IMG/VR virus record: IMGVR_UViG_3300013233_000093
Span: 158,907-222,906 of that record
Direction: 5' to 3' (one strand)
Length of the DNA stretch: 64,000 nucleotides
The notes under the pieces were generated by a model. The model saw only the letters and a program-made list of their open reading frames with translations, was not told the origin of the DNA and did no database searches. Of this stretch, positions 24,638 through 64,000 are shown piece by piece; position 1 is the first letter of the stretch, and every line of letters begins with the position of its first letter. Made by a program: the position numbers and the translations under genes.

Positions 24638-25900
24638 TTACAAGACTCCGCAATCCACAGGTCCGACGTATATCGTGTCGGGGTATACCGGTGGTGCACG
24701 GTTTGGATCTATTGGCAAACAGTTTACAATGTCGCTGTCTACGAATGGGAATCCGCCGATAACGCTGCTGCTGTCTGTAACGTCTCCGCTATCTGTGCTG
24801 TCGCCTGAGCTATCGTCGGTGCTGTCGGTGGTGTCTACCACCACAGAGTCATCACTGATAACGCTGCTGCTGTCACTCTCGGTAGCTGTGTCTGCGACGA
24901 CCGTGTCGTCCACACCGGCCTCTACCAGGATGTCGTCTCCAGATACAACCTCGGCAGTACCGCTAGTTGTGTCTGTGGAGGTGCTGTCCGTAGAAGTACT
25001 GTCTGTGCTATCTGTACTGTCACTTGACGTACTATCGGTACTATCCGTAGTGTCAGTAGTGGTGTTATCTGTAACCGTTTCCACCGTGTTATCGGACGTC
25101 TCTACTGTGTCAGTGGTCACTGTAGAAGAACCGTCTGCCTCCACCACCGTGGTTACGGTCTCTGTGGTATACACAGTAGTGACTGGATGATTTGCCAAAT
25201 GCGCTGCCAGTGATTCTTCAGCAGCGATCACCCTAGCAGTAAGCTTAACGTTCTCTTCCACACATGCATGGATGGCAGAAAACATCTGACTCATGTCTTC
25301 CCGCAACCGTCCCATAATTTTTATGGTTCTGCTGTCCTGCTCTTTAAGGGCAAGTCCAGCTAGATTTAACGGGCGTGACTCCACAAGCGATTGCTGCAGT
25401 CCCAACACACTGTCCCGTAACGGATTAAGGTGCGTGATTTGCGATAGTGGATGCGTGTGATCCTCTGGTGTAAACCCGCCGGGTATCTCAGTTAGATTGT
25501 TAAACGAGACGGACGTGGTTTTAACCGCATCGATCGTGGCACGCAGATCCATGATCAGTTGGTTACTGCGACCTTCCACACCACCGACTGCCTGATAGGT
25601 TAACAGTACTTTACTGTATACTCCGGGGTTTGTGATGTGGATTGCCGTGGCGGTTTCTATGCCAGTGGCCAAGGTGATGTCTGCATCTATGCTGTAAAAG
25701 TCATAGTCCGTACCAAGTAACAGAGGGACGCTAACGCCTTCTGCTCGCAGTATCAACCCTGGCGTGTACATGAGACCGTGGTTGGCCACGATAATGTACG
25801 CCGTAGTGGCAGATACCTCATGTAACTCATCTACGATGTAGTTGGAGGGGTTAGCCGCCGTACCATCGTATCTGTATTTTAAGGCGTTTACGACAGACAT
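24638..25900 (-). CDS. Virion structural (tail/baseplate) protein with Ser/Thr/Asp-rich tail
   Basis: YRYDGTAANPSNYIVDELH, TYQAVGG, FTPEDHTH; N-terminus shared with 35966 and 37692 (phiKZ-type tail family). Confidence 0.75.
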   Translation of the reverse strand: MSVVNALKYRYDGTAANPSNYIVDELHEVSATTAYIIVANHGLMYTPGLILRAEGVSVPLLLGTDYDFYSIDADITLATGIETATAIHITNPGVYSKVLLTYQAVGGVEGRSNQLIMDLRATIDAVKTTSVSFNNLTEIPGGFTPEDHTHPLSQITHLNPLRDSVLGLQQSLVESRPLNLAGLALKEQDSRTIKIMGRLREDMSQMFSAIHACVEENVKLTARVIAAEESLAAHLANHPVTTVYTTETVTTVVEADGSSTVTTDTVETSDNTVETVTDNTTTDTTDSTDSTSSDSTDSTDSTSTDSTSTDTTSGTAEVVSGDDILVEAGVDDTVVADTATESDSSSVISDDSVVVDTTDSTDDSSGDSTDSGDVTDSSSVIGGFPFVDSDIVNCLPIDPNRAPPVYPDTIYVGPVDCGVL

Positions 25901-25915
25901 TGTATCGTGCCCTCA

Positions 25916-26293
25916 TTAAATAATATCGTCAAAGAAATGCGTACGTATGTACCCGTATACCCTCGTGCCTAATTGCATGGCGGATGCTCTACGAGGCTTC
26001 ACCTCGCAAGCAGCCAGTGCCATTTTAAAGTGTTCGTTAGCCACTGTCCAACCGTGCCCGTTTACCAATAGCCAGTCGTGAACTACTGCAGCAAGAAAGT
26101 ACTTATCTACAGGAGGGTAAAGTCCCCACAGCCATCTTGGCACTGAAGCGCCGTCCGTCACAAACCCTGCTTCTATATCGTAACCCAAGATCGTAATCTT
26201 ATCGCGCAGTCGATAGCGCACCGTCGGGTTATCCACAGAAGGGAGTAAGATGTCGACAGCGACGCATTTGATGTCTTTAAGCGTGGATTGCAT
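25916..26293 (-). CDS. DUF1353 family protein
   Basis: GFVTDGASVPRWLW...AAVVHDWL. Confidence 0.85.
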   Translation of the reverse strand: MQSTLKDIKCVAVDILLPSVDNPTVRYRLRDKITILGYDIEAGFVTDGASVPRWLWGLYPPVDKYFLAAVVHDWLLVNGHGWTVANEHFKMALAACEVKPRRASAMQLGTRVYGYIRTHFFDDII

Positions 26294-26479: not shown

Positions 26480-28213
26480 TTAACCCAGCACGTGTACTAA
26501 GCCGGTGTTCAAACCAGCCGCGTCGTTCCCTGTGCTACCGGCCAACCCACGAATGCCAGACAAGTCAACAGACACGTCGTGTCCGAAACTGTCCCCGCTC
26601 AGTGAACTGGCTGATACGATAGACGCAGTGTTGCCCCAGACAGAAGCTGTATTTAGATACACTAAAACCATGCCTGTTTCAACGGCTGCGTTATCTTGAA
26701 ACGGAGCGCCAACAAGTAACGTCAAACCGTCACCTGATAGTGCCACCGAGGTCCCAAAGTTTGCACCCAGCTCAACGGTGGGCGCTTCTATCTTTGTAAC
26801 TGCAGTCCATACGGACGTTGTGTTACTGTAAATGTACACACCACCGGCACCGGCCAGTGTAGCGTCATCTGCATTAGCGCCAATGGCACACGTAAGCCCG
26901 TCGTTTGAGATGGACACCGCAAAGCCAAAGTGATCGTTAGCGGTTACGCTTAGATCTGTCAATTCAGACGTAAGGCTCCATGCACCAGCAGCCAGTGTGT
27001 ATACTTCCGCTTTACCTGCACCTACTCCTGCAGTAGAGTCATAGGGAGACCCCACTACCAGATTGTTGGCGAGGCCGTCGACGTCGACTGCGTGACCAAA
27101 GTACCCGTCAGCGATAGCCACTGGCGGTGCAATACCTGCGGTCTGTGTCCACACACCTAAGGCGTCTTTCGTGAACACGTACACATAGCCCGCCGTCGTG
27201 ACCGGGATCACGCCCACTGTTTTAGTAGGTGATCCAATTACCACGCAGTTACCTGCGGTGTTTACACTCACACTGTAGCCGAACCATCCGATGTCTGTGT
27301 GATCCAATGGCACCAGTGATGTATCCAGTGTCCAGACACTGCCTGTGCGTTTATACACATGTACCGCACCAGCACCGACTACGTTATTGACATTACTGTT
27401 ACCATACGCACCCACGGTTAAAACATCGCCCGTTTCGTTAAGAGACACGTCACAACCAAAGTATGCGCTGGCTTGTCCAAGCGGATGCATGAGTTTTTCT
27501 TTCTCTACCCAAATACCTGCGACTTGTTCATAAAGAAACACGGCGCCTGAGTCTAGTCCGAGTGTGTCGTCCAGATACATACCTACAGCTGCGTACACGC
27601 CGTTTCCAGAGATAGCAGTGGCATTGCCATACTGACCGCCTAAAGACGGCGTAGAGGGCACCAGCGTCCCTACAGTGCCTGTGATGTCCAACGCTTCCAC
27701 GGTGAACGACGTCACAGGACCAAACTCAGAGACCACGCCGTTACTGCCTTCGTAACTTACACGAGCAAAGTATTGAGTGGTGGCGTTTAGTGTAACGCCC
27801 AGCGCACCCAAATCCACTGTGTTACTGGTACTCACGGTTCTACCACTGTCGTACACTACGTTGGTAAATGTAACGTCTAACGCAAGCACCAGGCGATAAG
27901 CCACTTGGGTGTCTGAGTTATAGTTTACATCCACGCCCGTAAAGGAAGACAGTGTGATGATTGGAGAGGGCACTACGTTTAACGCACCGTTAACTGGCAC
28001 CGTTACCTTGGGAGGCGCCACGCCTGTTAAGATAGACGAGGTAATCGCCTGACCACCGGGTGTACTGCCGTCGTGAATGTGAATCACGGGCGCCGCTGTA
28101 TCGGTATAATCAATCACCATTTCATTTAGAGGACCTGTGTAGGCGCCGTTAGCGCCTGCCGTAAACGTGCGTTTCCACAGCCACGGCTCGGTCATTTGTT
28201 TTTCGCCAGCCAT
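26480..28213 (-). CDS. Tail fibre/adhesin: Mtd_N-like + FN3-like + FG-GAP propeller
   Basis: YTGPLNEMVID...IHDGSTPGG; QYFARVSY; seven (F/Y)G..V.lS..G...vGA blades. Confidence 0.85.
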   Translation of the reverse strand: MAGEKQMTEPWLWKRTFTAGANGAYTGPLNEMVIDYTDTAAPVIHIHDGSTPGGQAITSSILTGVAPPKVTVPVNGALNVVPSPIITLSSFTGVDVNYNSDTQVAYRLVLALDVTFTNVVYDSGRTVSTSNTVDLGALGVTLNATTQYFARVSYEGSNGVVSEFGPVTSFTVEALDITGTVGTLVPSTPSLGGQYGNATAISGNGVYAAVGMYLDDTLGLDSGAVFLYEQVAGIWVEKEKLMHPLGQASAYFGCDVSLNETGDVLTVGAYGNSNVNNVVGAGAVHVYKRTGSVWTLDTSLVPLDHTDIGWFGYSVSVNTAGNCVVIGSPTKTVGVIPVTTAGYVYVFTKDALGVWTQTAGIAPPVAIADGYFGHAVDVDGLANNLVVGSPYDSTAGVGAGKAEVYTLAAGAWSLTSELTDLSVTANDHFGFAVSISNDGLTCAIGANADDATLAGAGGVYIYSNTTSVWTAVTKIEAPTVELGANFGTSVALSGDGLTLLVGAPFQDNAAVETGMVLVYLNTASVWGNTASIVSASSLSGDSFGHDVSVDLSGIRGLAGSTGNDAAGLNTGLVHVLG

Positions 28214-28222
28214 TAACCTCTC

Positions 28223-29902
28223 CTAAGCGTATGTGTATACCGCACCGGCTTCGTTACCGTTAGTGCCTTCACCGAAAGCACCCACTGCACCGACAGAACC
28301 GTCTGCTGATAATGATGTTGAAATACCCACGTAATCGTAGGACGTTGCGTTACTTGCGGAAACAGAGGTGCCAGCTTGCACCCACGTGCCTGTGGCTTTA
28401 GAGAAAATACTAAAGTCACCTGCGTACACGTTAGCCCCATACGCACCTGCAATGATTAACAGCCCGTCACCTGAGATGGCAACCGAACGACCAAACGCAT
28501 CGCTTGCAGATAACCCGGAAGGCACCAGTCGTGTACCACTGTCCCATGCACCGTTAACGGTATCGTAAGTGAATACGTATATCGCGCCTGCAGAAGTCGC
28601 AGTGGCATCTTCACCGTACGCACCGATTACAACAGTATTACCGTCAGTAGACGAATCCACCGAGTAACCAAAGTATCCGTAAAGCTCGGGAGTGGGTGGG
28701 TAGAGTACATCGTCTTCGTTATAACCACCACCGCCATCGGGTGAGAATACGAACACGGCACCTGCGTCGGTTTGACCTGCATCGTCGGACAAATAAGCGC
28801 CCACGAACAAGCGTGACGCATCCCCCGCCATAGACACAGACGTCCCAAAGCGATCGCCGGTAGTGGTGTTATTAGCCAACACTTCGTTTTCTTTGCCGTC
28901 TGTAAAATCGCGGTTATCGGGATCCCACGTATAAACAGCACCGCTGGAGTTACCATTAGCTGGATTAAGGTCGGAACCTGCTGCTAACCATAAACCGTCA
29001 TCAGAGATGGATACTGAAATGCCTAACTGGTCATCTTGATTACCCGTAGCCAGCATTTTTACATCTTCACTCCAGTTGTTCCCGCCGCCGCCGTCTAGGA
29101 AGATATAGATAGCGCCTTCTGCGGGAGCATTACCGCCATCGTGCATATAAGCACCAACCGCCAGTACATCACCCACGTCGTTCAACGACACAGAGTAACC
29201 AAAGAAATCGCCAGATTGTGTATCGCTGCCTGTAAATGCCGCGTCCTCGATCCATTTCAAGGTAGGTGCATCCCATTTATAGATATACACCTTACCGCCG
29301 TCAGTACCAGCATCAGTTTGCAAGTACGAACCTACGGCTAATGTCAGTCCATCGGCAGACAATGCCACCGACTGTCCAAAGCGATCGCCGCCAGCAGCAT
29401 CACTGGCGTAAACGATGTCTGTCTCTGTAGACAAGACATCTGCCAATGTGCTAAAGGAAATCACAGGTGACCATGAGGACAACGGTGCAAGGTTGGATTC
29501 ATAGCGCACTTGGATGTAGTACGTAGTACCTTGGATTAACGTAAGTCCTAACGAGGTTAAATCCAACGACGTTAGGTTCGCGGTATCACGGGACGTATCC
29601 ACGACTAACGTGGACATGGCTGCGTCTGTAGCCACTCGCCAGTAAGAGGCCACGTGCGTGCCGTCTCCTGACATTGTACTTGCGGTTACAACAGGAGCAG
29701 TGGTAAACCCACCAGCACCGTCCAGTGGGGAAGTCACGGAAGGAGCTGTAATGGCAAACCCTACTGGGTCTAACGAGACACCACCCGCCACTGTATTTTG
29801 AATCAACAACTGTCCCTTGCCTTCCCGAACAAGCAACTCGCCATACTCGCCTGCTTTAGCGGGCGCTTCTAAGGCAGTCAACGGATGTAGTTTTACTCGC
29901 AT
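28223..29902 (-). CDS. Tail fibre/adhesin: Mtd_N-like + FN3-like + FG-GAP propeller
   Basis: GELLV; TTYYIQVRY...SSWS; repeated FG.SV.LS.DG..L.VGA. Confidence 0.85.
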   Translation of the reverse strand: MRVKLHPLTALEAPAKAGEYGELLVREGKGQLLIQNTVAGGVSLDPVGFAITAPSVTSPLDGAGGFTTAPVVTASTMSGDGTHVASYWRVATDAAMSTLVVDTSRDTANLTSLDLTSLGLTLIQGTTYYIQVRYESNLAPLSSWSPVISFSTLADVLSTETDIVYASDAAGGDRFGQSVALSADGLTLAVGSYLQTDAGTDGGKVYIYKWDAPTLKWIEDAAFTGSDTQSGDFFGYSVSLNDVGDVLAVGAYMHDGGNAPAEGAIYIFLDGGGGNNWSEDVKMLATGNQDDQLGISVSISDDGLWLAAGSDLNPANGNSSGAVYTWDPDNRDFTDGKENEVLANNTTTGDRFGTSVSMAGDASRLFVGAYLSDDAGQTDAGAVFVFSPDGGGGYNEDDVLYPPTPELYGYFGYSVDSSTDGNTVVIGAYGEDATATSAGAIYVFTYDTVNGAWDSGTRLVPSGLSASDAFGRSVAISGDGLLIIAGAYGANVYAGDFSIFSKATGTWVQAGTSVSASNATSYDYVGISTSLSADGSVGAVGAFGEGTNGNEAGAVYTYA

Positions 29903-29912
29903 GACATCTCCC

Positions 29913-30623
29913 CTAAAGCGCTAAAGCATCTGCAATAGCTGTGGTAAAACGCTGTGATACGTTAATGTCTTGTAACGCAGGAAGATCTCCTGTGGAGACC
30001 GCCAAGTTCATCTGGATCTCCAACTCACCACGCACCTTATAACCCAGTGCGTAACGAGTAAGGATCGCACGATACAGCTCAGTAGCCGCAGTGCTGTCCG
30101 CGATGTCCAAAGAAGCAGATGCATTACGATCCGCCAGATGTCCTGGTGTGTTTAGATTGACTACTGCTTTGGCACGCCAAGTAGTGGCGGCTGCCCAGCC
30201 TGCAGTAAAGGCATCCATCAGATCTTTCGCGTCAGACTTAGCCGCGCCGTCGTGTGAGATCATCACTCCGCTGTAAGGCAGTCGAGTGGTGATGTACCGT
30301 TTATGCACGGCTTTCAACTCACGCAGTTTTACGTCCAACAACTCTTCGGCAGTCATATCCACTGCACTGTAGTTGATTGTAATGGTTGAATCGTTTTCTT
30401 CTCTACCGATCACCCGTAGACGTTGGTTTGGGCTTACAGGCGGCTTATTAGCCACGACCTGTTTTACAACCAGATGGTCTCCGATGGCAGCGCCACCGTG
30501 GATGGATCCTGGCACCAGGTTAGGGTCAATGCCGTTTCGTGCAGCCAGGTCACGCACTGCGATGGGATCGTATTCCACAGGACCCATAACACGTTTACCA
30601 CTTCTAAAAATTTCGCACAACAC
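29913..30623 (-). CDS. Probable tail fibre assembly protein (DUF4376-like)
   Basis: Between fibre genes; LLDVKLRELKA...TWR helical C-half. Confidence 0.5.
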   Translation of the reverse strand: MLCEIFRSGKRVMGPVEYDPIAVRDLAARNGIDPNLVPGSIHGGAAIGDHLVVKQVVANKPPVSPNQRLRVIGREENDSTITINYSAVDMTAEELLDVKLRELKAVHKRYITTRLPYSGVMISHDGAAKSDAKDLMDAFTAGWAAATTWRAKAVVNLNTPGHLADRNASASLDIADSTAATELYRAILTRYALGYKVRGELEIQMNLAVSTGDLPALQDINVSQRFTTAIADALAL

Positions 30624-30635
30624 GTTATACCACTC

Positions 30636-32354
30636 CTATCCGAATAAAATAACACCGCCGCCGTTTACAACGACGCTTGCATCTGATGCAGCACCTGCTG
30701 CTAATGTATCGCCACGATCGCTTACCGCCAGAGAACTGCCCAGCTTACCGCTGGCACCTACTGTGGTGCTGGTTAAGGTCACGGTCTCTATCCAGTTATT
30801 GGACAGATCTTTACTGAACATATAGATACTGCCCGCATCCACGCCGCCTGCTACTGTGTCTTTAAGACGCGCAGATACGAAGAGTTGGTCGCTGGTGGAT
30901 GTGAACACAAGCGCACCGCCAAAGGCATCGCCGAGTACGGTGGTCGCGGGCTTTAACAATCCATATTCTGTCCAGACACTGTTAATGTCCTTTCTATACA
31001 AATGCACTGTCCCTGTCTCTGTGCCGATCCCGCCTTCAGTGGGTGCGCCTACAGCGATCACACTGGCATCCGGACTGATGCAGACACTAAGGCCAAACTG
31101 TCCGTCTGCTTGTGGTGTAGACGATGTCAACGCGACTTCCGTCCACACACCTAAGACTTGCTCAAACACATACGCATCACCGGTCTTACCGGATGCTGCT
31201 CCGTGATATGTACCAATCACAATTACTTTCTTGTCATCCGACACACTTAGAGAGTACCCGAACTGTGCGGCTGTGACTTGTACCGCAGGCGTTAACACAC
31301 CTTTGTTATACCAGTCGTTTGCAGCATCCACTTCAAAGATTTGTGCAGTGCCCAGGGCGGTTGAATTACGCTCACCCACCACGACCATTGTGCCGTCAGA
31401 AGACACAGTCAGTGAACTGCCAAATAACGCAGATGCCACAGGAGTGTTAGACACCACTGTTTTCTCTAGTGTGTATGCGCCGTTTACTCTACGGTAGATA
31501 TGCACTTGTCCTGCGTTAGTGACCACGGAGCCGTTTACCACTGGATCTCCCAGTGCTTCAGATATAACAAGTACTTGTCCGTCATTAGACATGGCCATGG
31601 CCTGTCCAAAGTAACTGTATGTTACACCGGCGGGTGAGAAGATGCGTTGTGTCTCCACGTAAGCGTTGTTTACCAATTCACTGATATAGACAGATCCAGT
31701 ATCAATGATGGCGTTACCGTCTTCGTATGGCGCTCCTGTGGCCATAATGCTGCCATCGCCAGAGAGGGCTACTGAAGAACCAAAGAAATCATCTGCTGCT
31801 GCATCGGACGCCACAACGTGTGCTAATTCAGCTGTGGGATACGCCAACGCTACGGTAAAGCTTACAGGCGCACTCCAGTCAGACATTACCCCTGCAATAG
31901 AAGTATACCGCACTCTAGCGTAATACGTACCTACTGATAGTGGCGAGTTAAGACTGGCTACATCGAACTGCGTTAAAGCAGTATAAGACTCTGGTATATT
32001 AGCTACCAGGTTTTTCATTGTTACGTCGGTGGCGATTTCCCAAAAGGCAGTGGCTTGCTGTGCTACAGATTTATCACTGTTGATTCCTTCGAAAGGAACT
32101 GCAGATAACATAGGTTCTGGATGCACGCCTGTACTGCCTTCCACAGGCGTCACCATGATGGGTGTTACTACACCACCAATGCCAGTGCCCATCGCCGGAT
32201 AACCGCCTGGTGTAACGCCGTCACCCAAGCGTAAGCGAGGGGTGATATCACGACGATCTACAAACAACTCATCCTTTAACTGGATGTTGTTGAATAAGTC
32301 CGTCGCGTTAAACGAGTTTAAAACTACCGGCTGTGTTAAGAATACAGTAGGCAT
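30636..32354 (-). CDS. Tail fibre/adhesin: Mtd_N-like + FN3-like + FG-GAP propeller
   Basis: LRLGDGVTPGG; GTYYARVRY...SDWS; FFGSSVALSGDG...GAP repeats. Confidence 0.85.
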   Translation of the reverse strand: MPTVFLTQPVVLNSFNATDLFNNIQLKDELFVDRRDITPRLRLGDGVTPGGYPAMGTGIGGVVTPIMVTPVEGSTGVHPEPMLSAVPFEGINSDKSVAQQATAFWEIATDVTMKNLVANIPESYTALTQFDVASLNSPLSVGTYYARVRYTSIAGVMSDWSAPVSFTVALAYPTAELAHVVASDAAADDFFGSSVALSGDGSIMATGAPYEDGNAIIDTGSVYISELVNNAYVETQRIFSPAGVTYSYFGQAMAMSNDGQVLVISEALGDPVVNGSVVTNAGQVHIYRRVNGAYTLEKTVVSNTPVASALFGSSLTVSSDGTMVVVGERNSTALGTAQIFEVDAANDWYNKGVLTPAVQVTAAQFGYSLSVSDDKKVIVIGTYHGAASGKTGDAYVFEQVLGVWTEVALTSSTPQADGQFGLSVCISPDASVIAVGAPTEGGIGTETGTVHLYRKDINSVWTEYGLLKPATTVLGDAFGGALVFTSTSDQLFVSARLKDTVAGGVDAGSIYMFSKDLSNNWIETVTLTSTTVGASGKLGSSLAVSDRGDTLAAGAASDASVVVNGGGVILFG

Positions 32355-32837: not shown

Positions 32838-33851
32838 TTACGCCAAGGCGTCTTTCTCTTCAACGATGATACGGGCGCGCAGAGGCTCGCCCAACACCAA
32901 AGTTGCAGACTTAGCAGTAGGGTCCATTTCAACCTGCACATAGTCGTTCAACCATTTGCCGGTCACTGCGTCTTGGAAGAGCGCATCGACAGACAGGTAG
33001 TTGCCAGACAAGTTATGTGCGAAGCTATGGGTGACCATAGGTGTAGCAGAATCGTACAATGCAACACGGCTGTTCAAGCTGTCTTTCAACACAGCAGCAC
33101 CAGCACCGGCTTCTGCTTTCAGCTCGTTCACAGCACCAACCAAGTCACTGGCAGATGTTTGAAGATCTGCAACAGTACCGATTTCGTTTTCGAGATAAGT
33201 CATGCCATCGCTTAACGCTTGATCGGCAGCGGTGAAGCCATCGGACACAACAGTGCTGAGATCAGAGATCGCAGTAGCGTTGGTTTTGTTGTTAGCATCA
33301 ACTTCGTTAATCGCAGCAACCAGGCTGGATTTGTTAACGGTCGTCAGTGTAGCCAAATCACCGATAGCGGTGGTGATGGTGGTAAGCTTAGCTTCCACTT
33401 CACCCAACGTATCCATCGCAGTCGTAGCAGTACCAAGGATCTGTTGATCCAAGCTGGCGATGCTGGTGTTTACCAATGTTTCCAGGGTGGTAGCGATGTT
33501 AGGATCGTTGTTGATGGCAGCGGCCAGTGTTTCCAGAGTCGCCAGAGCGGTAGGTGCATTACCCACAACGTCAGCGATCACTTTACGGAAAGAACCAGCA
33601 GTGACATCATCGCCATTAATGACGTTGACCACAGATTCCAGAGCCAGTACATCAGCTTCGGTAGCGAAGGTTTGGACGACGATAGCGCCAGCGCTGTCCA
33701 GAGAGCTCAAACGCATGACTTTATCAGTGTCGTTATACCAAATACGACCTGCTACCACAGGGGTAGGATCGGCCGCTAAGCGTTCGACGTTCAGGTTGTT
33801 GATGGTTTCAGAACCGATAATTTCCATGCCGTGCATACGTGCATAAGCCAT
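32838..33851 (-). CDS. Coiled-coil fibre/whisker protein
   Basis: ALATLETLAAAINNDPN and IGDLATLTTVNKSSLVAAINEV fibre motifs; own terminator. Confidence 0.75.
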   Translation of the reverse strand: MAYARMHGMEIIGSETINNLNVERLAADPTPVVAGRIWYNDTDKVMRLSSLDSAGAIVVQTFATEADVLALESVVNVINGDDVTAGSFRKVIADVVGNAPTALATLETLAAAINNDPNIATTLETLVNTSIASLDQQILGTATTAMDTLGEVEAKLTTITTAIGDLATLTTVNKSSLVAAINEVDANNKTNATAISDLSTVVSDGFTAADQALSDGMTYLENEIGTVADLQTSASDLVGAVNELKAEAGAGAAVLKDSLNSRVALYDSATPMVTHSFAHNLSGNYLSVDALFQDAVTGKWLNDYVQVEMDPTAKSATLVLGEPLRARIIVEEKDALA

Positions 33852-34244: not shown

Positions 34245-35963
34245 TTACGGTAATGTACCGCAGTCTATGATGTCATTAATCGTCATCAAGTCTGCGACGT
34301 TTACCGCACCAAGCACCGTCGTTGCCGCCAGTGCATCAGTTAGTGCCTGAGGCAGAAGCGCTGTCACAGCTGCAGTAGCAGCGGGTGCTAATTTAGCGTC
34401 CACCTCGGCGGTTACAGCAGCAGGTAAGTCTGCAGCAAGTTGCGTGGTAATCAAACCTGGCAATGTCAATGCTACAGTGTCTGCTACTTGTGTGCCAATG
34501 ACTGCTTGAATGGCTCCGGGCAACTGTACAGTCACCTCTGCCGTCACAGCCGCTGGCATGTTTGCGTTCAACAGATTTACCAACTCAGTCGTGAGCTGTC
34601 GCGTTACTTCAGCAGTCACCGCTGTGGATAACTGTAAAGTAACTTCTGTTTGAATGCTGTTGCTGATTTGATTCGTTACTTCCGTGCCCACCAGTGTAGC
34701 CAGGTTCAAAGCCAGGTAATCGGACACTGCAGTGGCCACAGACGAGCCAATCGTGTTTGTGATTACCGTGGTGATGTTAGCAAGATCCAATACCATTGCT
34801 GGTGTGATGTCTTGTAACTGCTGGGGTAAGTTGGTTGCGATGTTCAACGTAGTAATTGCGTCGTTTACCGCTGTGATTGCGGCGGCGCTCATTAGCGGCG
34901 GCAGATCAGTCAACTTAAACGTCGTCATAGACTGCGTTACGGTTGTGTTGATCGCATCCGGTATGGTCGTGGCCATAATGGGCGTCAACGCAACAGACAA
35001 TGCAGCGGACACTTCGTTTGTTACCGTAGACGCCAGCGCCTGTAAGTTGGTGACGTCTGTAGGCGTAATCAACTCAATGTGTGCAGGGATGTTAATTGGC
35101 GGGATGTACGTCGTTAACGCGGCTTGTACTGCAGTGTTAACCTGGTTAGGTATAGTGACGTCAAAGTTAAGTGCGGTCAATGCCGCGTTTACCGTTGTAT
35201 TCACCGCACCCGTAATGTCAGCTGCAACCAAAGAAGCAGAAACCGCGTTAGCGACTTGCGAAGGCAATGTAACATTGACAATGTCGTTCGTGGCTAATAA
35301 AATCTTATCCGCGATAGACGAATCAATACCTGCAGCGGCGATGGCCAAAGAAACTTGTGCCACAACCTTACCCGCTAAGTCTTCCGCAAGTAACTGTGCA
35401 GTCACCTCTGTTGTAACTGCTGGTGTAATGGCGGTAGCAAGAACACCCGTCAGTACACGGTTTACTTCAGCCGTTACCTTAGCGGGGATATCTTGCAGTA
35501 CAACAGTGTCTGTAACCATTCCTGGTAGATTGGCCAGTGCCAGAGTCGTGGTGACCTTTGTGCCAATCGCAACATCGATTTCATTCGCCAACGCCAACTG
35601 CAAAGACGATGTTACATTAGCAGTCACTGCCGCTGTAATCAACGCATTGAGGTTGGCCAGGTCTGCTGCTTGCGCGACCGTAATAGCACCGATGTGTGTG
35701 GGTAGGATTGTCGTTAAGTCAATCAGTCCCATCGCAGTAGCGACTGCTGTATCCACCGTGGTGGCGATACCGGCTAAGGCATTAACCACATCTACAGATA
35801 ACAGGCCTAGGTTAATCCAGGTCTTGCCTGCAACGGCAGGATTATACCACAACTCGCCAGTTACTGTAATGAGCGCAGGCAGTGCAGGGTCTGTCGTGGG
35901 CACTGCTGGATAATCCGGCAGTGAAAATGGAGCTTGAAACTCCAGTGGTGATAAAACTAACAT
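34245..35963 (-). CDS. Ala/Val/Thr/Leu-rich long helical fibre protein
   Basis: AVTAEVTxQL repeats; C-terminal IDCG; AGGAG RBS. Confidence 0.75.
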   Translation of the reverse strand: MLVLSPLEFQAPFSLPDYPAVPTTDPALPALITVTGELWYNPAVAGKTWINLGLLSVDVVNALAGIATTVDTAVATAMGLIDLTTILPTHIGAITVAQAADLANLNALITAAVTANVTSSLQLALANEIDVAIGTKVTTTLALANLPGMVTDTVVLQDIPAKVTAEVNRVLTGVLATAITPAVTTEVTAQLLAEDLAGKVVAQVSLAIAAAGIDSSIADKILLATNDIVNVTLPSQVANAVSASLVAADITGAVNTTVNAALTALNFDVTIPNQVNTAVQAALTTYIPPINIPAHIELITPTDVTNLQALASTVTNEVSAALSVALTPIMATTIPDAINTTVTQSMTTFKLTDLPPLMSAAAITAVNDAITTLNIATNLPQQLQDITPAMVLDLANITTVITNTIGSSVATAVSDYLALNLATLVGTEVTNQISNSIQTEVTLQLSTAVTAEVTRQLTTELVNLLNANMPAAVTAEVTVQLPGAIQAVIGTQVADTVALTLPGLITTQLAADLPAAVTAEVDAKLAPAATAAVTALLPQALTDALAATTVLGAVNVADLMTINDIIDCGTLP

Positions 35964-35965
35964 GT

Positions 35966-37690
35966 CTAGCTCCTACTTACGCGTGCGCGTACATTGCCTG
36001 CTGCAGAAAGAACAATCTGCATGTTGTTGGCGTCTACGTTCTCCACGCCTAATACATCACGTCTCCATTTACCTGTGGCATCCTGCACCCAAATAATGAC
36101 ATCACAGAAATCATCATTTAAGTTGTGCGGTAGATTGTGAATCGTGGTGGGTGTGGTGGATATGTAATCCCAGGTAGCGCCCTGTAAAGCGGTCACGTAG
36201 TTGTGCACTAACGTAAGTTCGTTTTGCAACTCCGTTATAAGTAATGTCAGACCATCTTGACGATCTGAGACATTGACTACCGATTGAGATAAGTCACTGG
36301 CCACAGAAGCAGCTGCCCAAGTACTGGGCTGCACCACCACTTTAACGGTAGGTGTGGTATTATCAAATCTCAACAAGAATGCATTTAACCCGTCCAACTC
36401 AATGTCCACCAGATCACGTCTGTAACGTCCTGGAGAGACTTCCATCCATAAAGTAATGGATAGGTACGACGAGTTCAGTCTGTGTGTAACAAACTGTTCT
36501 GGCTGTGCTGAGTTGTACTTTGCGATATACGAGTTAGGCAAGGGCTGTTGTAACACCACCATCATTAACTGCGCCGCGTCCATTGTGATACGAACGACGT
36601 TGTTGGATATGGTTTCTGCTTCGTACACCGTCTGTGTCCAGATACCATTGATATCCACCCACACACAGATCGAAAGAAAACCCGTCGATAAGTTATGGTT
36701 TATATCCACCGTAGTCGCAGGCACAATGTTTTCATACACATGCCCACCTGCCGTGACCTTTCTGATCACCGCGCGTATGCGGATAGGTGTACTGGAGTTC
36801 ACAATAACCGTGTTAGCATCCAACATCATCGCGTCATGCAATGGTACAGACCACCGACCGTTATCGTCCTCTGCCCAGATTTGTACATCGAGAGAAAACG
36901 AGTTAAGTCCATGAGTGATCGTGTGCGTGGCAATCGCAGTAGGCGAGTTATACGCAAAGCTGTCCACTGTAGGAACCGGCAACTGAAAGCCAGTTTCAAT
37001 GGTGGTGTTCAGTGTATCGAACAACTCCATCGCGTCTAAATAAGACTGCTTTACACCACCGAAGTTAGACTCCACCGTGTTCTGTCTGTCTTCCACATAG
37101 CCCTGACGTATCTCTACACCAGTGACTTGTTGTAACGTGGCGACATCGCTGCCAGGAGACAGTCTGTTTGCACCTACTGTCAACTCACCCACGCCTGCAA
37201 TCAATGCAGTACAGAACTCATCGTTGTTTAAAAGAGGTCTTTTAAACCGTGTGTTATACCCATCGCTGCCACGGAAGTTCAACCATTCTGCTGTAGAGAG
37301 CGGGTTAAACGTAGCCGAACGAATCGAGTCTAAAAGACCTTTATCTTCGTATACGTCTACTTGCACTCCATCAACAACATGATGTCCGACTGCCTGGTAA
37401 ACCAAACGTATGTACAGACCCTGTCGTTCTATGACAAGATACGTATACGCCTCTTCGCCTGTATCGGCTGTAATGGCCAGAAACAAAGGAGAGAATTGAT
37501 AATCTACATTGGCCACCAATGGTGTCCACTGAGGACTTGCCAGTGATACAGTCCCTTCCACAATCAAACCGTGTCGGTAGAATGCACCTGCTGTGGGAAA
37601 CACAGCCACAGATGAATTTGTGGAATGCACTTCGTCTTGTATTAAGTTATCCGCCGAAATGGCGGTATGGTCAAAAGCATACGTCGCCAT
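35966..37690 (-). CDS. Tail protein: phiKZ-type N-domain plus four HxL beta-domains
   Basis: YAFDHTAISADNLIQDEVH; THGL, NHNL, THRL, PHNL repeats. Confidence 0.75.
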   Translation of the reverse strand: MATYAFDHTAISADNLIQDEVHSTNSSVAVFPTAGAFYRHGLIVEGTVSLASPQWTPLVANVDYQFSPLFLAITADTGEEAYTYLVIERQGLYIRLVYQAVGHHVVDGVQVDVYEDKGLLDSIRSATFNPLSTAEWLNFRGSDGYNTRFKRPLLNNDEFCTALIAGVGELTVGANRLSPGSDVATLQQVTGVEIRQGYVEDRQNTVESNFGGVKQSYLDAMELFDTLNTTIETGFQLPVPTVDSFAYNSPTAIATHTITHGLNSFSLDVQIWAEDDNGRWSVPLHDAMMLDANTVIVNSSTPIRIRAVIRKVTAGGHVYENIVPATTVDINHNLSTGFLSICVWVDINGIWTQTVYEAETISNNVVRITMDAAQLMMVVLQQPLPNSYIAKYNSAQPEQFVTHRLNSSYLSITLWMEVSPGRYRRDLVDIELDGLNAFLLRFDNTTPTVKVVVQPSTWAAASVASDLSQSVVNVSDRQDGLTLLITELQNELTLVHNYVTALQGATWDYISTTPTTIHNLPHNLNDDFCDVIIWVQDATGKWRRDVLGVENVDANNMQIVLSAAGNVRARVSRS

Positions 37691-37691
37691 T

Positions 37692-38678
37692 TTAATCACT
37701 CACTTTAAGTAACGTCAGCGCACAAGACACGTTAATGTCTGCGACGACAATGGATTCCACAGTAGCGTCAGGGATACGGATCTGCATGGTTATAACACGA
37801 CCTGCTGTAATGCCCACTGGACTTACGCCCAATGTAGAAGCAGAAACCGCATAGCCGTCTATCAAGTACCGAAACTCGTAATGTTGCCGTACACCGTTTA
37901 ACAGCGCTCTTGGATTACCTGATAAAAACACCAGATAGTTGCCTGTGTATTTTACCAACACACTGACACCTACGTCTACCCATTCATTCATAGTGACCAA
38001 TGGAAGCTGTTTTAACACCGTGCCGGTAGAACCGCCTGTGTGATAAAACGCAGTCGCTGCTGCTAACTGTCCAATGGCCAATGAAACGTTTTTCATGGAG
38101 TCTACAATAGGCGCTACTAACGTCGTATCCAGATCCACTATATCACTCATTGTAATATGACGGTCTGGTGATCTTACTGCTAATGACAACGTTTCAAAGG
38201 CAGCCAATATTTCTGGCACACCTGTGATGGTGGTCAGGGGTGTATTGTGGGGTGTAGGGGGGAAGGTCGCAGGGATGTCTGTCAGACTGCTCCAAGGTGT
38301 GTTTATCAACTCACCTAATGTACTAAGACCGTCTGCTAATGCAGTGGTCATGGCATTGACGTAATCGCCGCCCAGCGTCCGATAAACCAACCGATATGAC
38401 CCCGTGGCCGCTAGGTTGTAAAAACCTATGGCACCGTAAATAGGGAATCCCGTCTCTATTGAAGCCTCTTCAAAGGGGTAAGCAAAGAAGAAATCACTGC
38501 CTTCGGAAATAGGCATACCTGACTCTGCATCTACCACCACCATGCTGCTTGCAAAGAAGGGTGCTGCGTCTGGAATAAGGTAATTATATTGCGTTCCGTT
38601 TATGGCCGTGATTGTATGAAGTTCATTAGGGATTTTGTTACCCGGTATTACCCCCAATGGATCGAAGTCATATGGCAT
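37692..38678 (-). CDS. Virion structural (tail) protein, phiKZ-type family
   Basis: YDFDPLG..PGNKIPNELH, PDAAPFFA, YRTLGG, FPPTPH. Confidence 0.8.
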   Translation of the reverse strand: MPYDFDPLGVIPGNKIPNELHTITAINGTQYNYLIPDAAPFFASSMVVVDAESGMPISEGSDFFFAYPFEEASIETGFPIYGAIGFYNLAATGSYRLVYRTLGGDYVNAMTTALADGLSTLGELINTPWSSLTDIPATFPPTPHNTPLTTITGVPEILAAFETLSLAVRSPDRHITMSDIVDLDTTLVAPIVDSMKNVSLAIGQLAAATAFYHTGGSTGTVLKQLPLVTMNEWVDVGVSVLVKYTGNYLVFLSGNPRALLNGVRQHYEFRYLIDGYAVSASTLGVSPVGITAGRVITMQIRIPDATVESIVVADINVSCALTLLKVSD

Positions 38679-38739
38679 CTTGTTATCCTCTTGGGTGCTG
38701 ATCATATAATTATAGAGTGCACACGTATAGGGGCAAAAA

Positions 38740-63500: not shown

Positions 63501-64000
63501 CTGCCGTCCCGTAAGCCGTCACCGTCGACATCGCCTGCTGTAGACGCACCCTGGTCACGAATCTCTCGTAAGGCATCTAGTTGTGCCTGCAGGTATCCTC
63601 TAGAGGTCGTATCTGCAACGGTATCGTCGCCCGTTTCAATGTCGTCGCCGGTATTACCCTCACTATCCGCATCGCTTAAAGATGTATCTGGAGTTCTATC
63701 CAGAATCTCCGTAAGCGTAGCTAATATCTCAGCGGGGGTGTCTGTCGGAGGGACACCGTCGCCTGTGGGTGCCGGAGGCACCGGAGATGCTATCAGTGGC
63801 GACAGCGAAGCTGGGTCGCCCTGACGGATGTCAGATAACCCAACACGTGGACTCGCTGGCGCTCCCCCACCTGTGGGTGGAGCCGCATCACCTGTGGGTG
63901 CCGGAGGCACCGGAGATGCTATCAGTGGCGACAGCGAAGCTGGGTCGCCCTGACGGATGTCAGATAACCCAACACGTGGACTCGCTGGCGCTCCCCCACC
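60596..64000 (-). CDS. Giant tail-associated lysin/tape-measure-like protein (gp181-like) with M23 peptidase; 5' end outside window
   Basis: DVDGDG..DGS, RYMQYG, WF..RF.PVY; HKGID, YAHM and HLHFE M23 motifs; frame open to window edge. Confidence 0.85.
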   Translation of the reverse strand, partial: GGGAPASPRVGLSDIRQGDPASLSPLIASPVPPAPTGDAAPPTGGGAPASPRVGLSDIRQGDPASLSPLIASPVPPAPTGDGVPPTDTPAEILATLTEILDRTPDTSLSDADSEGNTGDDIETGDDTVADTTSRGYLQAQLDALREIRDQGASTAGDVDGDGLRDGSFRGQGGRSDEEQADDNADDNRNGSRRGNRGNRGNRNQVGMMAKLAGLFGMGGMGGDGGTPPIPDMPGGRPGPGNRPTPPRGGGGFFSKAFNAVKNVGGKIVNVAKVAVPLAMTYGASAMAAAGTAATTVASTVAAVGAGTVLLGAAVAGALGYGAYLLYKHVKRGAKVDRLEAMRYMQYGVYPSDKDFVYQLRILEELVDDNMTWKDDKPTLSKPPEYFFNELHEGFGRFKNNEADLTEWSVWFKRRFMPVYFTHISVLRKIDSGADIDDVDDDLDKDDVVSYIMRTQFNADDAARGLDPYAVIAEPMRGRSMSSMRKETEDYVVQLMDYYTHKDGVDTKLPALPVRSKAKQRTSTITRPGSTDPNRAVKQEGIIDPHDMAKTVKRVARNTAKAAAVGTALVAGQLYEDAIHPPLPGGKTKLMMPVKGIISSPFGMRIAPIEKTRSMHKGIDIAAPNGSPIMAAADGEIYRQYKSTTYGNVIYMKHGDGTGTRYAHMQGFAPGTGIGARVKQGQLIGFVGDTGHSDGDHLHFEWRKDLRQSAPVFDPMTGFNAEDKTTVVNAIKEAKVMAKAEKIVTPDAKLEGVNTLLPETATADESVVGNLFSGIASTFKSGKEVANPGMDLAELTPSAQAGVDSSKIDAVSATGMDLSVLQEEKRRRQLAAADDTPPAMLAAVTPPAKPKILSLEQSKLARRQMKELLGTDTRAVKSDVLTFTEINEHRAGLGLSPLSRKRYASLYGTDRLAADGGESVVKYDQQDITTANATRAQLGREPISKEVYSAIPASAAVAYNAPQGVTGGMADSIREENINFNHFAPSPAVTATAAPVVQERVNVPVTNKTTTLTRNDHRTELTSNDLYLQSPDVARGYKEARQNRFTNAVADDSMRNQIQRVNLLQTAVTQRETMIANQGKMIEQLDRIAVASESTEVHVATTNVNVSSPNPQRKNDPSAFTQSARPLRSVVNFKS
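63762..64000 (-). repeat. Exact 129-bp (43-aa) tandem repeat, truncated by window end
   Basis: Units begin at 63762 and 63891. Confidence 0.95.

What the first reader, a model, noticed from the sequence alone, without database searches (positions are those of the whole stretch)
26480..32354. Three fibres joining an Mtd_N-like anchor and FN3 to an integrin-alpha-type FG-GAP propeller
Seen: same three-part architecture (559-577 aa), diverged sequences, acidic loops (DDAGQTDAG, DDTLGLDSG). Known: Mtd_N anchors the Bordetella BPP-1 tropism protein, whose tip is a DGR-varied C-type lectin; FG-GAP propellers occur in integrins and bacterial adhesins/lectins. Inference: tropism breadth gained by paralogy of propeller heads instead of a DGR; possible binding to glycans, biofilm or animal surfaces.
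Basis: partly seen in the sequence, partly recalled or inferred. Interest (0 to 1): 0.7.

Follow-up and report, generated by a model that had tools for sequence, protein, structure and literature searches.

The report
Three propeller-headed jumbo-phage tail fibres
An uncultured phiKZ-like jumbo phage from a microbial mat carries three old, diverged copies of a probable tail-fibre tip protein built from a trimer-forming Mtd-like anchor, an FN3 spacer and an integrin-type seven-bladed propeller; the same gene trio is kept in related phages, and it is an undescribed variant of a known kind of phage host-recognition protein.

Summary
Three minus-strand genes, F1 26480-28213, F2 28223-29902 and F3 30636-32354, encode paralogs that are 27-30% identical. 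Each has three parts:
- an about 50-residue N-terminal domain that is a divergent Mtd_N. Pfam's own model misses it, but profile searches link it to Mtd and to 53 bona fide Mtd_N proteins;
- an FN3-fold sandwich;
- a seven-bladed FG-GAP propeller homologous to integrin alpha, but without the integrin Ca2+ motif.

The genome is a 222.9-kb phiKZ-like jumbo phage, and the genes lie inside its tail-fibre cluster. A DUF4376-like gene of the tail-fibre-assembly type sits between F3 and F2, and a DUF1353 gene follows F1. The N domain is predicted to form a trimer.

The genome has no reverse transcriptase, hence no DGR, and the paralogs differ most on the propeller's top face. However, the triplication is old. 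Two other jumbo-phage genomes of about 200 kb (three contigs) keep the same cassette with one-to-one orthologs. It is therefore a fixed three-head set, not a recent widening of host range.

At least 34 further metagenomic cluster representatives share the architecture, and no cultured phage record does. Presence in the virion and the ligand are both untested. My verdict is a new variant of a known kind.

The parts
30636..32354 (-). F3 (572 aa), first gene of the cassette ('position 1'): Mtd_N-like + FN3 + seven-bladed FG-GAP propeller
   Evidence: ORF. Pfam FG-GAP_2 E 5e-30. AF2 model pLDDT 90.3. Integrin alpha propellers are the top structural matches. Orthologs in L015 and L017 form a clade with support 99/95.
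32190..32333 (-). F3 residues 8-55: Mtd_N-like N-terminal domain, predicted to form the trimer
   Evidence: A profile of 7 family N-termini ranks Mtd (1yu0-1yu4) first in the PDB, E 0.02, aligned to Mtd residues 2-47. Of 64 remote hits of that profile, 53 are Pfam Mtd_N. The reciprocal HMM gives E 1.3e-7. Homotrimer test: ipSAE 0.67 against best control 0.00, with contacts only in residues 8-55.
31839..32180 (-). F3 residues 59-172: FN3-fold beta-sandwich spacer
   Evidence: Model pLDDT 93.7. Foldseek finds FN3-like modules at E 1e-4, TMt 0.70-0.76. VIA gives Z 9-11.6 to dozens of FN3 domains, including lambda gpJ. Pfam hits to Ig_Rha78A_N and Pur_ac_phosph_N are weak and below cut-off.
30639..31838 (-). 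F3 residues 173-572: seven-bladed FG-GAP propeller; strand 176-180 completes the last blade
   Evidence: DSSP shows 7 blades of 4 strands. VIA Z 37-41 to integrin alpha over model residues 171-572, against at most 33 for WD40 proteins.
29913..30623 (-). C (236 aa; the true start is probably the ATG at residue 13): DUF4376/XkdW-like protein of the tail-fibre-assembly type, kept between positions 1 and 2
   Evidence: No Pfam or PHROG hit. ESM Atlas feature score 0.92 (181 of 256 shared) and TM 0.58-0.62 to DUF4376 clusters. Homologs sit at the same position in L017 (E 4e-30) and L015 (E 4e-15).
28223..29902 (-). F2 (559 aa), 'position 2': same architecture with the most divergent and shortened N domain; the best-conserved ortholog group
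   Evidence: Pfam FG-GAP_2 E 2e-56, 7 stretches. Ortholog clade support 100/100, with 50% identity to L017. Its top-face loops are as conserved as its strands. The N domain is hit by the family profile at E 1e-8 but not by the reciprocal Mtd_N-type HMM.
26480..28213 (-). F1 (577 aa), 'position 3': same architecture
   Evidence: Pfam FG-GAP_2 E 1e-42. Reciprocal Mtd_N-type HMM E 3e-13. Ortholog clade support 100/100.
25916..26293 (-). B (125 aa): DUF1353 protein, in a PHROG annotated 'tail assembly chaperone', downstream of position 3
   Evidence: Pfam DUF1353 E 7e-17. phrog_1158 E 2e-20. The same neighbour follows the last FG-GAP gene in L015 and on the contig of P0127.
24638..25900 (-). A (420 aa): fibre protein with a phiKZ gp134/gp135-like N-terminal domain
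   Evidence: phrog_2163 E 5e-26. BLASTP to PhiPA3 gp153 and gp154 N-termini, E 1e-11.
32838..33851 (-). E (337 aa): tail-fibre-like protein upstream of the cassette
   Evidence: 12 PHROG tail-fibre families, best E 3.5e-14. Its C-terminal 60 aa resemble those of I.
34245..35963 (-). H (572 aa): unassigned protein within the fibre cluster
   Evidence: No family match. A syntenic gene of 566-576 aa is present in L016 and L017.
35966..37699 (-). I (577 aa): fibre protein with a gp131-family N-terminal domain
   Evidence: phrog_2163 E 1e-11. BLASTP to PhiPA3 gp153 N-terminus.
37692..38705 (-). J (337 aa): counterpart of phiKZ gp131 / PhiPA3 gp150 that lacks their C-terminal propeller
   Evidence: J residues 12-193 match PhiPA3 gp150 residues 10-191, E 5e-26, but J is 337 aa against 738 aa. 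Its N domain matches 234 phage records, almost all of phiKZ-like jumbo phages.

Best explanation
F1, F2 and F3 are three distinct receptor-binding tip or side proteins of the baseplate fibre network of a phiKZ-like jumbo phage.

Each chain forms a trimer through its roughly 50-residue Mtd_N-like N-terminal domain. As in Bordetella phage Mtd, that domain is also expected to dock the trimer onto another fibre protein. Here the likely docking partners are the gp131-family proteins J, I and A, or H and E. The FN3 domain acts as a spacer. Each trimer presents three seven-bladed FG-GAP propellers, and their top faces (the 2-3 and 4-1 loops) contact a host-surface ligand, most likely a polysaccharide or an outer-membrane protein.

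The three paralogs have different top faces, so they probably recognise three different ligands or play three different roles. The trio is an old, fixed part of the virion design in this phage clade. It takes the place of the propeller that phiKZ carries on gp131 itself. The DUF4376-like gene C and the DUF1353 gene B probably help fold or assemble these proteins.

Shown: the domain architecture, the homologies, the conserved gene order and the orthology. Predicted: trimer formation. Inferred: presence in the virion, the docking partner, the ligand and the binding face.
For: Architecture: FG-GAP_2 in all three proteins. Integrin alpha propellers are the best structural and sequence matches. The middle domain has the FN3 fold. 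The Mtd_N link rests.

Trimer: the homotrimer test on F3 residues 1-175 scored 0.67 against a best control of 0.00. This mark was reached by 20 of 30 proteins solved as pairs of one chain and by 1 of 23 proteins solved as single chains. Run-to-run contact agreement was at least 46% and the partner's pLDDT at least 76. All confident contacts lie in residues 8-55.

Context: the genes are tightly packed, with 9-12 nt gaps, on one strand inside a cluster of tail-fibre genes. Proteins with the gp131-family N domain flank them. Chaperone-like genes lie within and just after the cassette.

The Mtd_N-type domain retrieved by the family profile sits on proteins with typical fibre parts: collagen, Phage_fiber_2, Gp53-like_C and beta-helix. 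The same N+FN3 module carries Lcl_C-like heads in other metagenomic proteins, so the C-terminal domain behaves as an exchangeable head.

The gp131 counterpart J lacks the propeller that phiKZ and PhiPA3 carry at the fibre tip (PMC13250141).

Between paralogs the top-face loops are the most divergent parts: identity 0.18 and 0.21 against 0.30 for strands.

The cassette and one-to-one orthologs are conserved in L015 and in L016/L017. An FG-GAP protein of cyanophage S-TIM5 is annotated as a virion structural protein, and in LR797314 an FG-GAP gene lies among the genes just after the tape-measure gene.
Against: There is no proteomic or imaging evidence that these proteins are in the virion.

Pfam's Mtd_N model does not match them, even at E 10. 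F2's N domain is linked only through its paralogs.

The trimer is a model prediction. It was made with my own alignment and with three copies, which differs from the tool's calibration.

F2's top face is conserved across phages. That fits a structural partner or a conserved receptor better than a fast-evolving host-range determinant.

The conservation figures rest on only three sequences per ortholog group.

Propellers of this fold can also be enzymes: CylK scored Z 35.5.
Confidence: 0.6

Rival explanations
1. The three paralogs assemble with one another into a single heterotrimer (F1, F2, F3 at 1:1:1) through their Mtd_N-like domains. This would give one composite fibre tip with three different propellers, rather than three kinds of homotrimer.
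For: The three ortholog groups co-occur strictly, in fixed gene order, in three genomes. The N domains differ more between paralogs (identity 0.21) than within ortholog groups (0.37-0.49), which fits non-equivalent subunits. There is a precedent in the same phage group: the phiKZ fibre base is modelled as a candidate hetero-hexamer of gp131-family paralogs (PMC13250141).
Against: The F3 N-terminal part passes a homotrimer test on its own. Other lineages carry 2, 3 (independently duplicated) or 4 copies, which argues against a strict 1:1:1 requirement. No test run here separates hetero- from homo-oligomers.
Confidence: 0.15
2. They are virion-associated proteins, but not the primary receptor binders. 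They could be propeller-based enzymes that modify or cut surface polysaccharide. They could instead be adhesins that hold the particle in the extracellular matrix of the mat, much as Ig-like capsid decorations are proposed to do.
For: Enzymes with the same fold score high (CylK Z 35.5). Earlier authors raised an enzymatic role for the gp131C propeller (PMC4901313; PMC13250141). The source is a microbial mat rich in matrix. An acidic start to the top-face loops is conserved across the whole FG-GAP_2 family.
Against: No catalytic family or motif was detected. The best matches by a wide margin are the ligand-binding integrin alpha propellers. The position among fibre genes, the Mtd-type anchor and the swappable heads are the hallmarks of receptor-binding proteins.
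Confidence: 0.15
3. They are not virion components. They would be phage-encoded proteins made during infection, acting in or on the host cell, and lying among the fibre genes by chance.
For: There is no direct virion evidence. Most FG-GAP_2 proteins in the databases are bacterial, and some are lipoproteins, such as the Vibrio mimicus relatives.
Against: They have no signal peptide or lipobox. Their N domain is of a type found on proteins that carry tail-fibre domains. They are packed tightly with fibre and chaperone-like genes, and this gene order is conserved in three genomes.
Confidence: 0.05

Closest known systems
Bordetella phage BPP-1 major tropism determinant Mtd (PDB 1yu0-1yu4)
   Same: Homologous N-terminal domain: Mtd residues 2-47 are the top PDB hit of the family profile. 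The retrieved relatives are Pfam Mtd_N proteins. Both have the same three-part plan of a small N-terminal trimerising domain, a beta-sandwich and a ligand-binding head. From memory of McMahon et al. 2005, the Mtd domain boundaries are about 1-48, 49-170 and 171-381, close to 8-55, 59-172 and 173-572 here. The trimer is predicted to form through the N domain. Some proteins with the same N+FN3 module carry Lcl_C-like heads; from memory, Lcl_C has a C-type-lectin-like fold.
   Different: The head is a seven-bladed FG-GAP propeller, not a C-type lectin fold. The genome has no reverse transcriptase or DGR. Variation comes from three fixed paralogs rather than mutagenic retrohoming. Pfam's Mtd_N and mtd_2nd models do not match. 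The phage is a jumbo myovirus-type phage rather than a podovirus.
phiKZ gp131 and its paralogs gp132-135 (gp131C propeller, PDB 4GBF)
   Same: Same phage group and the same gene neighbourhood. Both are seven-bladed propellers proposed to sit at the distal end of baseplate fibres and to bind the host (PMC13250141). Both belong to sets of paralogs.
   Different: F1-F3 lack the gp131-type N domain. The propellers show no detectable relation: neither the sequence profiles of the F family nor the top 50 structural matches list 4GBF. Here the gp131 counterpart J has no propeller, and the propellers sit on separate chains with an Mtd-type anchor.
Integrin alpha-subunit beta-propeller (FG-GAP repeats)
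   Same: Homologous seven-bladed propeller: profile E 1e-13, Foldseek E 1e-16 with TM 0.70, VIA Z up to 41. In integrins the ligand-binding face is formed by the 2-3 and 4-1 loops (textbook knowledge). Those are the parts that differ most between the three paralogs here.
   Different: The Ca2+-binding DxDxDGxxD hairpins are replaced by short S-x-D-G hairpins. There is no I domain, thigh or calf domain, or beta-subunit partner. The protein is a predicted homotrimer with a phage anchor.
Staphylococcus phage phi11 receptor-binding protein Gp45
   Same: A homotrimeric phage receptor-binding protein in which each chain contributes one beta-propeller, so that three propellers form a platform facing the cell. 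The propeller cavity is proposed to bind a sugar (PMC4901313).
   Different: The phi11 propeller is five-bladed and unrelated. Its stem is helical and it carries C-terminal tower domains. The phage is a siphovirus of a Gram-positive host.
FG-GAP repeat proteins annotated in cultured phages (Vibrio phage nt-1, cyanophages S-TIM5 and S-MbCM6, Sinorhizobium phage Phosso)
   Same: The FG-GAP_2 propeller is 25-30% identical. S-TIM5 gp054 and the S-MbCM proteins are annotated as virion structural proteins.
   Different: None covers more than 71% of F2, and none matches the Mtd_N-like and FN3 parts. None belongs to a phiKZ-like phage. None has been characterised functionally, as far as the searched literature shows.

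Membership tests
Pfam Mtd_N (PF18454) | Match to the family's own HMM above its gathering score | tested here: not met
   No hit for the N-terminal 90-100 residues at E up to 10. No hit anywhere in the six-frame genome at E up to 10.
Pfam Mtd_N (PF18454) | Homology to Mtd and Mtd_N proteins detectable by profile searches | tested here: met
   The family profile ranks Mtd first in the PDB, E 0.02, N-terminus aligned to N-terminus. Of 64 remote hits at E up to 1.5e-5 among 1.84 billion proteins, 53 are Pfam Mtd_N, best E 1.4e-24. Two proteins retrieved as closer hits of the profile also match it; the one examined, P0222, has no detectable FG-GAP head. A reciprocal HMM built from those outside sequences hits F1 at E 3e-13 and F3 at E 1e-7, but not F2.
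Pfam Mtd_N (PF18454) | N-terminal position and trimer formation | tested here: met
   The domain lies at residues 8-55. The homotrimer test scored 0.67 against best control 0.00, with contacts confined to 8-55. This is a prediction only.
DGR-diversified tropism protein (Mtd type) | Reverse transcriptase and template repeat in the genome; C-type lectin variable head | tested here: not met
   No RVT_1 match in the complete 222.9-kb genome. The head is a propeller, not a C-type lectin fold.
FG-GAP_2 / integrin alpha-type propeller | Repeated FG-GAP units above the Pfam cut-off | tested here: met
   Scores of 104-188 bits against a cut-off of 23, with 3-7 stretches per protein.
FG-GAP_2 / integrin alpha-type propeller | Seven-bladed propeller fold closest to integrin alpha | tested here: met
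   Model pLDDT 90.3, with 7 blades of 4 strands. Integrin alpha gives Foldseek E 1e-16 and VIA Z 37-41, clearly above WD40 proteins at Z 33 or less.
FG-GAP_2 / integrin alpha-type propeller | Integrin-type Ca2+-binding hairpins (DxDxDGxxD) | tested here: not met
   No canonical or relaxed motif in F1-F3. In the alignment to integrin alpha-M, the Ca2+ loops face shorter S-x-D-G hairpins.
Fibronectin type III domain | Match to Pfam fn3 or a related family above its cut-off | tested here: not met
   Only sub-threshold hits to Ig_Rha78A_N (23.7 bits against 27.4) and Pur_ac_phosph_N (21.7 against 30). Eleven of 54 relatives match Ig_Rha78A_N at E up to 1e-3.
Fibronectin type III domain | FN3 beta-sandwich fold | tested here: met
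   Residues 59-172 have pLDDT above 90. Foldseek finds FN3-like modules at TMt 0.70-0.76. VIA gives Z 9-11.6 to many FN3 domains.
phiKZ gp131 fibre family | gp131-like N-terminal domain (phrog_2163) | tested here: not met
   No PHROG hit for F1-F3. No BLASTP similarity to J, I, A or to PhiPA3 gp150-154. The neighbours J, I and A do carry this domain.
phiKZ gp131 fibre family | C-terminal propeller related to gp131C (4GBF) | tested here: inconclusive
   The fold class is the same (seven blades). However, 4GBF is absent from the top 50 of both structural searches, and neither sequence-profile search of the PDB returned it. No direct pairwise structural comparison was possible.
Phage tail fibre / receptor-binding protein | Encoded in the tail-fibre module alongside chaperone genes | tested here: met
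   The gene order is conserved in L015, L016 and L017.
Phage tail fibre / receptor-binding protein | Present in the virion and binds the host surface | not testable with these tools
   The phage is known only from a metagenome. No proteome, image or host is available.

The most novel reading that the evidence does not exclude
In this clade of phiKZ-like phages the fibre-tip propeller has been moved off gp131 onto three separate, co-inherited chains. These chains assemble through an Mtd-type anchor, possibly as a heterotrimer with three different integrin-like propellers on one tip. The phage would then read three surface ligands at once with a fixed combinatorial head. That would be a third route to broad recognition, beside DGR mutagenesis and the swapping of single heads.
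Probability: 0.15. Interest if true: 0.7.

Novelty: new variant of a known kind. Interest (0 to 1): 0.5.

Why it matters
How jumbo phages recognise their hosts is poorly understood. Even for phiKZ, the fibre tips were only fitted with predicted models in 2026.

This locus gives a clear, testable design: an Mtd-type trimer anchor, an FN3 spacer and an integrin-type propeller, in three old paralogs with different top faces. The design is conserved across several uncultured phages of about 200 kb.

Three points follow:
- The Mtd anchor is a general adaptor that also carries non-lectin heads without a DGR.
- FG-GAP propellers, the integrin ligand-binding fold, are candidate phage receptor binders.
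- The propeller at the fibre tip can be supplied either in cis, as in phiKZ gp131, or on separate chains.

It also provides profiles that find Mtd_N-like anchors which Pfam's model misses.

Tried and rejected
- Pfam and NCBIfam scans of the N-termini found nothing. The Pfam Mtd_N model run over the whole genome found nothing. The link to Mtd_N appeared only with self-built profiles.
- A DNA search of the 5.9-kb region against cultured phages gave no match.
- The search for homologous proteins restricted to residues 1-175 returned only one multi-FN3 protein and was uninformative.
- The search for related loci with F3 in IMG/VR found no relative. With the position-2 ortholog group it found only the two contigs already known, plus one distant propeller.
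- I first suspected that the gene between F3 and F2 was the Peptidase_S80 gene seen at that place in L009. This was rejected: no similarity.
- A first tree suggested purely lineage-specific duplications. That picture changed once closer relatives were added.
- Literature searches for FG-GAP with phage tail fibres or with jumbo phages found nothing relevant. One search term, 'Mtd_N', collided with 'mtDNA' and was wasted.
- The metatranscriptome from the same sample is tiny (5 million letters) and shares no words with the region, so expression was not examined.
Such a test would not in any case have separated the two models.

Full report
WHAT IS THERE

The window is the last 64 kb of a complete 222,906-bp virus record with direct terminal repeats. 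On the minus strand lie three ORFs: F1 26480-28213 (577 aa), F2 28223-29902 (559 aa) and F3 30636-32354 (572 aa). They are full-length paralogs at 27-30% identity. Gaps between these genes are 9-12 nt, so they look like one transcription unit.

THE PROPELLER

Pfam FG-GAP_2 matches all three proteins far above its cut-off, at E 5e-30 to 2e-56. No other gene of the genome has this repeat. An AlphaFold2 model of F3 (pLDDT 90.3, pTM 0.81) shows seven four-stranded blades over residues 173-572, with strand 176-180 closing the last blade.

Integrin alpha propellers are the best matches by three methods:
- Foldseek: E 1e-16, TM 0.70.
- An independent all-against-all structural search: Z 37-41, against 33 or less for WD40 proteins.
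- Sequence profiles: E 1e-13.

The integrin Ca2+ hairpin motif is absent. In the alignment to integrin alpha-M, short S-x-D-G hairpins take its place. These lie on the top face by the standard propeller geometry known from integrins, which is established knowledge and was not tested here. An acidic start to this loop is part of the general FG-GAP_2 consensus.

THE MIDDLE DOMAIN

Pfam gives only sub-threshold hits to FN3-like families. A model of residues 1-175 (pLDDT 93.7) places residues 59-172 squarely in the FN3 fold. Foldseek finds FN3-like modules at TMt 0.70-0.76. The wide structural search gives Z 9-11.6 to dozens of FN3 domains, including one in the phage lambda tail tip protein.

THE N-TERMINUS

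Pfam's Mtd_N model does not match the proteins or any frame of the genome, even at E 10. NCBIfam also finds nothing. By that test the proteins are not members. The homology is nevertheless real, on four lines of evidence:
- A profile of seven N-termini from this family ranks Mtd (1yu0-1yu4) first among 177,635 distinct PDB sequences. The E-value is 0.02, and profile positions 7-54 align to Mtd residues 2-47.
- The same profile, run against 1.84 billion representative proteins, finds 664 proteins at E up to 1e-3.
- Of 64 of the more remote hits, 53 are bona fide Pfam Mtd_N proteins (best E 1.4e-24). They carry collagen, phage fibre repeats, beta-helix and other fibre parts.
- A reciprocal HMM built only from those outside sequences finds F1 (E 3e-13) and F3 (E 1e-7) and nothing else among 1,488 ORFs of the genome. 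F2, whose N domain is shortened, is linked only through its paralogs.

A homotrimer test on F3 residues 1-175 scored 0.67 against a best control of 0.00. That mark was reached by 20 of 30 proteins solved as pairs of one chain and by 1 of 23 solved as single chains. Contact agreement between runs was at least 46% and the partner's pLDDT at least 76. All confident contacts lie in residues 8-55. This is a prediction, made with my own alignment and three copies, so the calibration holds only roughly.

THE PHAGE AND THE NEIGHBOURHOOD

A 699-aa protein of the window matches 294 records of phiKZ-like jumbo phages. The nearest are Vibrio phages at 39% identity. The only sequencing run found to hold the region is labelled a microbial mat metagenome.

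The cassette lies in a minus-strand cluster of fibre genes. In order these are J, I, H, G, E, an 83-aa ORF, D, F3, C, F2, F1, B and A.
- J, I and A carry the gp131-family N-terminal domain.
- J is the counterpart of phiKZ gp131 / PhiPA3 gp150 (E 5e-26 over the N domain). However, it is 337 aa against 738 aa and lacks their C-terminal seven-bladed propeller.

According to the 2026 phiKZ atlas, the gp131 paralogs form the fibre base and the gp131 propeller sits at the distal tip (PMC13250141). F1-F3 have no gp131-type N domain. They also show no detectable similarity to gp131C. In this phage the propellers are therefore on separate chains with a different anchor.

Gene C resembles DUF4376/XkdW-type proteins, a type linked to tail-fibre assembly. 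The support is an Atlas feature score of 0.92 and TM 0.58-0.62, which is a lead rather than proof. Gene B is a DUF1353 protein in a PHROG annotated as tail assembly chaperone.

RELATIVES

The N-terminal profile retrieves at least 54 cluster representatives with the domain at residue 1. Of these, 37 match FG-GAP_2 (34 besides the window's own three), and the rest have similar length and repeat pattern.

Contexts of the relatives:
- Contig L015 (204 kb) has FG-GAP 561 aa, a 216-aa gene, FG-GAP 520 aa, FG-GAP 553 aa, DUF1353, and a 446-aa gene.
- Contigs L016 and L017 (197.5 and 176 kb) have the same order, together with the upstream fibre genes.
- The middle gene is homologous to C.

A maximum-likelihood tree groups the proteins by position, not by genome. 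Support is 99/95 for position 1, 100/100 for position 2 and 100/100 for position 3. The triplication therefore predates the divergence of these phages.

A more distant phiKZ-like fragment, L009, also has three copies. Two of them (positions 1 and 3) are close paralogs that group with each other rather than with any position group of the window's clade, so at least that duplication is lineage-specific. A prohead protease gene lies between two of them. Another 220-kb contig, L011, has four tandem FG-GAP genes with other N-termini. One 46-kb contig has two copies followed by DUF1353.

Among 50,697 cultured phage records, only 16 have any FG-GAP relative. None covers the N+FN3 part, and none is phiKZ-like. 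A pattern scan of IMG/VR with the position-2 group found only the L015 and L016 contigs. Literature searches found no description of FG-GAP fibres in jumbo phages.

WHAT VARIES

Between the three paralogs, the top-face loops are the least conserved parts. Identity is 0.18 for the 2-3 loops (with 16% gaps) and 0.21 for the 4-1 loops, against 0.30 for strands and 0.34 for the 1-2 hairpins.

Within ortholog groups the picture differs. Position 1 varies most in the 2-3 loops. Position 2 keeps its top loops at least as well as its strands (0.53 and 0.51 against 0.47). With three sequences per group this is only indicative.

The same N+FN3 module carries Lcl_C-like heads in three other metagenomic proteins. 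[quoted passage not shown]

INTERPRETATION

The best reading is that F1-F3 are three receptor-binding tip or side proteins of the fibre network. Each forms a trimer and docks through an Mtd-type anchor, and each presents propellers whose top faces bind host-surface ligands. The set is fixed and old, and it replaces the gp131 propeller.

The genome has no reverse transcriptase, so there is no DGR. The paralogy, however, is not a recent broadening of tropism.

Three rivals remain: a heterotrimer of the three paralogs; an enzymatic or matrix-adhesion role; and, least likely, a non-virion role. Virion membership, the docking partner and the ligand are all inferred, not shown.

NOVELTY

Propeller heads on phage receptor-binding proteins are known from phiKZ gp131C, phi11 Gp45 and PRD1 P2 (PMC4901313). 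The Mtd anchor is known, and FG-GAP proteins are already annotated in a few phages. What appears undescribed is the combination of Mtd_N-like anchor, FN3 and integrin-type propeller, and its conservation as a three-gene set in a clade of uncultured phiKZ-like phages. I rate it a new variant of a known kind, of moderate interest.

Noticed in passing
window 37692-38705 (-): J is the counterpart of phiKZ gp131 / PhiPA3 gp150 by its N domain (E 5e-26). [quoted passage not shown]
   Followed up: partly
window 29913-30623 (-): The 236-aa gene between F3 and F2 has no Pfam or PHROG family. It resembles DUF4376/XkdW-type proteins of the tail-fibre-assembly type in the ESM Atlas (0.92; TM 0.58-0.62). 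The Atlas record starts at residue 13, so the GTG start is probably wrong.
   Followed up: partly
window 60596-63910 (-): A 1104-aa protein combines a tail-fibre-like stretch (phrog_3201) with a metallo-endopeptidase/endolysin domain at residues 545-700. It is probably a virion-borne cell-wall hydrolase.
   Followed up: no
window 32838-33851 and 35966-37699 (-): E (a tail-fibre-like protein) and I (gp131-family N domain) share a C-terminal segment of about 60 residues at 37.5% identity.
   Followed up: no
L009:5939-11590: A more distant phiKZ-like contig also has three FG-GAP fibre genes, two of which (positions 1 and 3) are close paralogs that do not group with the window's position groups. 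A bona fide prohead protease gene (Peptidase_S80, E 6.5e-72) is wedged between the first and second.
   Followed up: partly
L011:10001-16442: A 220.6-kb metagenomic contig carries four tandem FG-GAP_2 genes (610, 386, 424 and 709 aa). At least the first of them has an N-terminus unlike the Mtd_N-like one; the other three were not examined. Tandem arrays of propeller genes therefore recur beyond this clade.
   Followed up: no
proteins P0133, P0136, P0156: The same Mtd_N-like + FN3 module is joined to Lcl_C-like heads instead of a propeller. From memory, Lcl_C has a C-type-lectin-like fold, which would be the Mtd arrangement.
   Followed up: partly
protein P0128 (859 aa): This protein has collagen repeats and three to four tandem Mtd_N units, including one near its C-terminus (residues 782-827). 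The domain is therefore not always N-terminal.
   Followed up: no
L021 (IMGVR_UViG_GVMAG-S-ERX556019-53_000001): A contig labelled as a giant-virus MAG encodes a propeller 32% identical to F2 over residues 173-559.
   Followed up: no
L016:6205-7611 versus L017:5905-7611: In two otherwise syntenic contigs the position-1 gene is called as 468 aa in one and 568 aa in the other. This is either a difference in start-codon choice or an N-terminal truncation in one population.
   Followed up: no
window 34732-35913 (+): A 393-aa open frame runs antisense inside gene H. It is most likely spurious.
   Followed up: no
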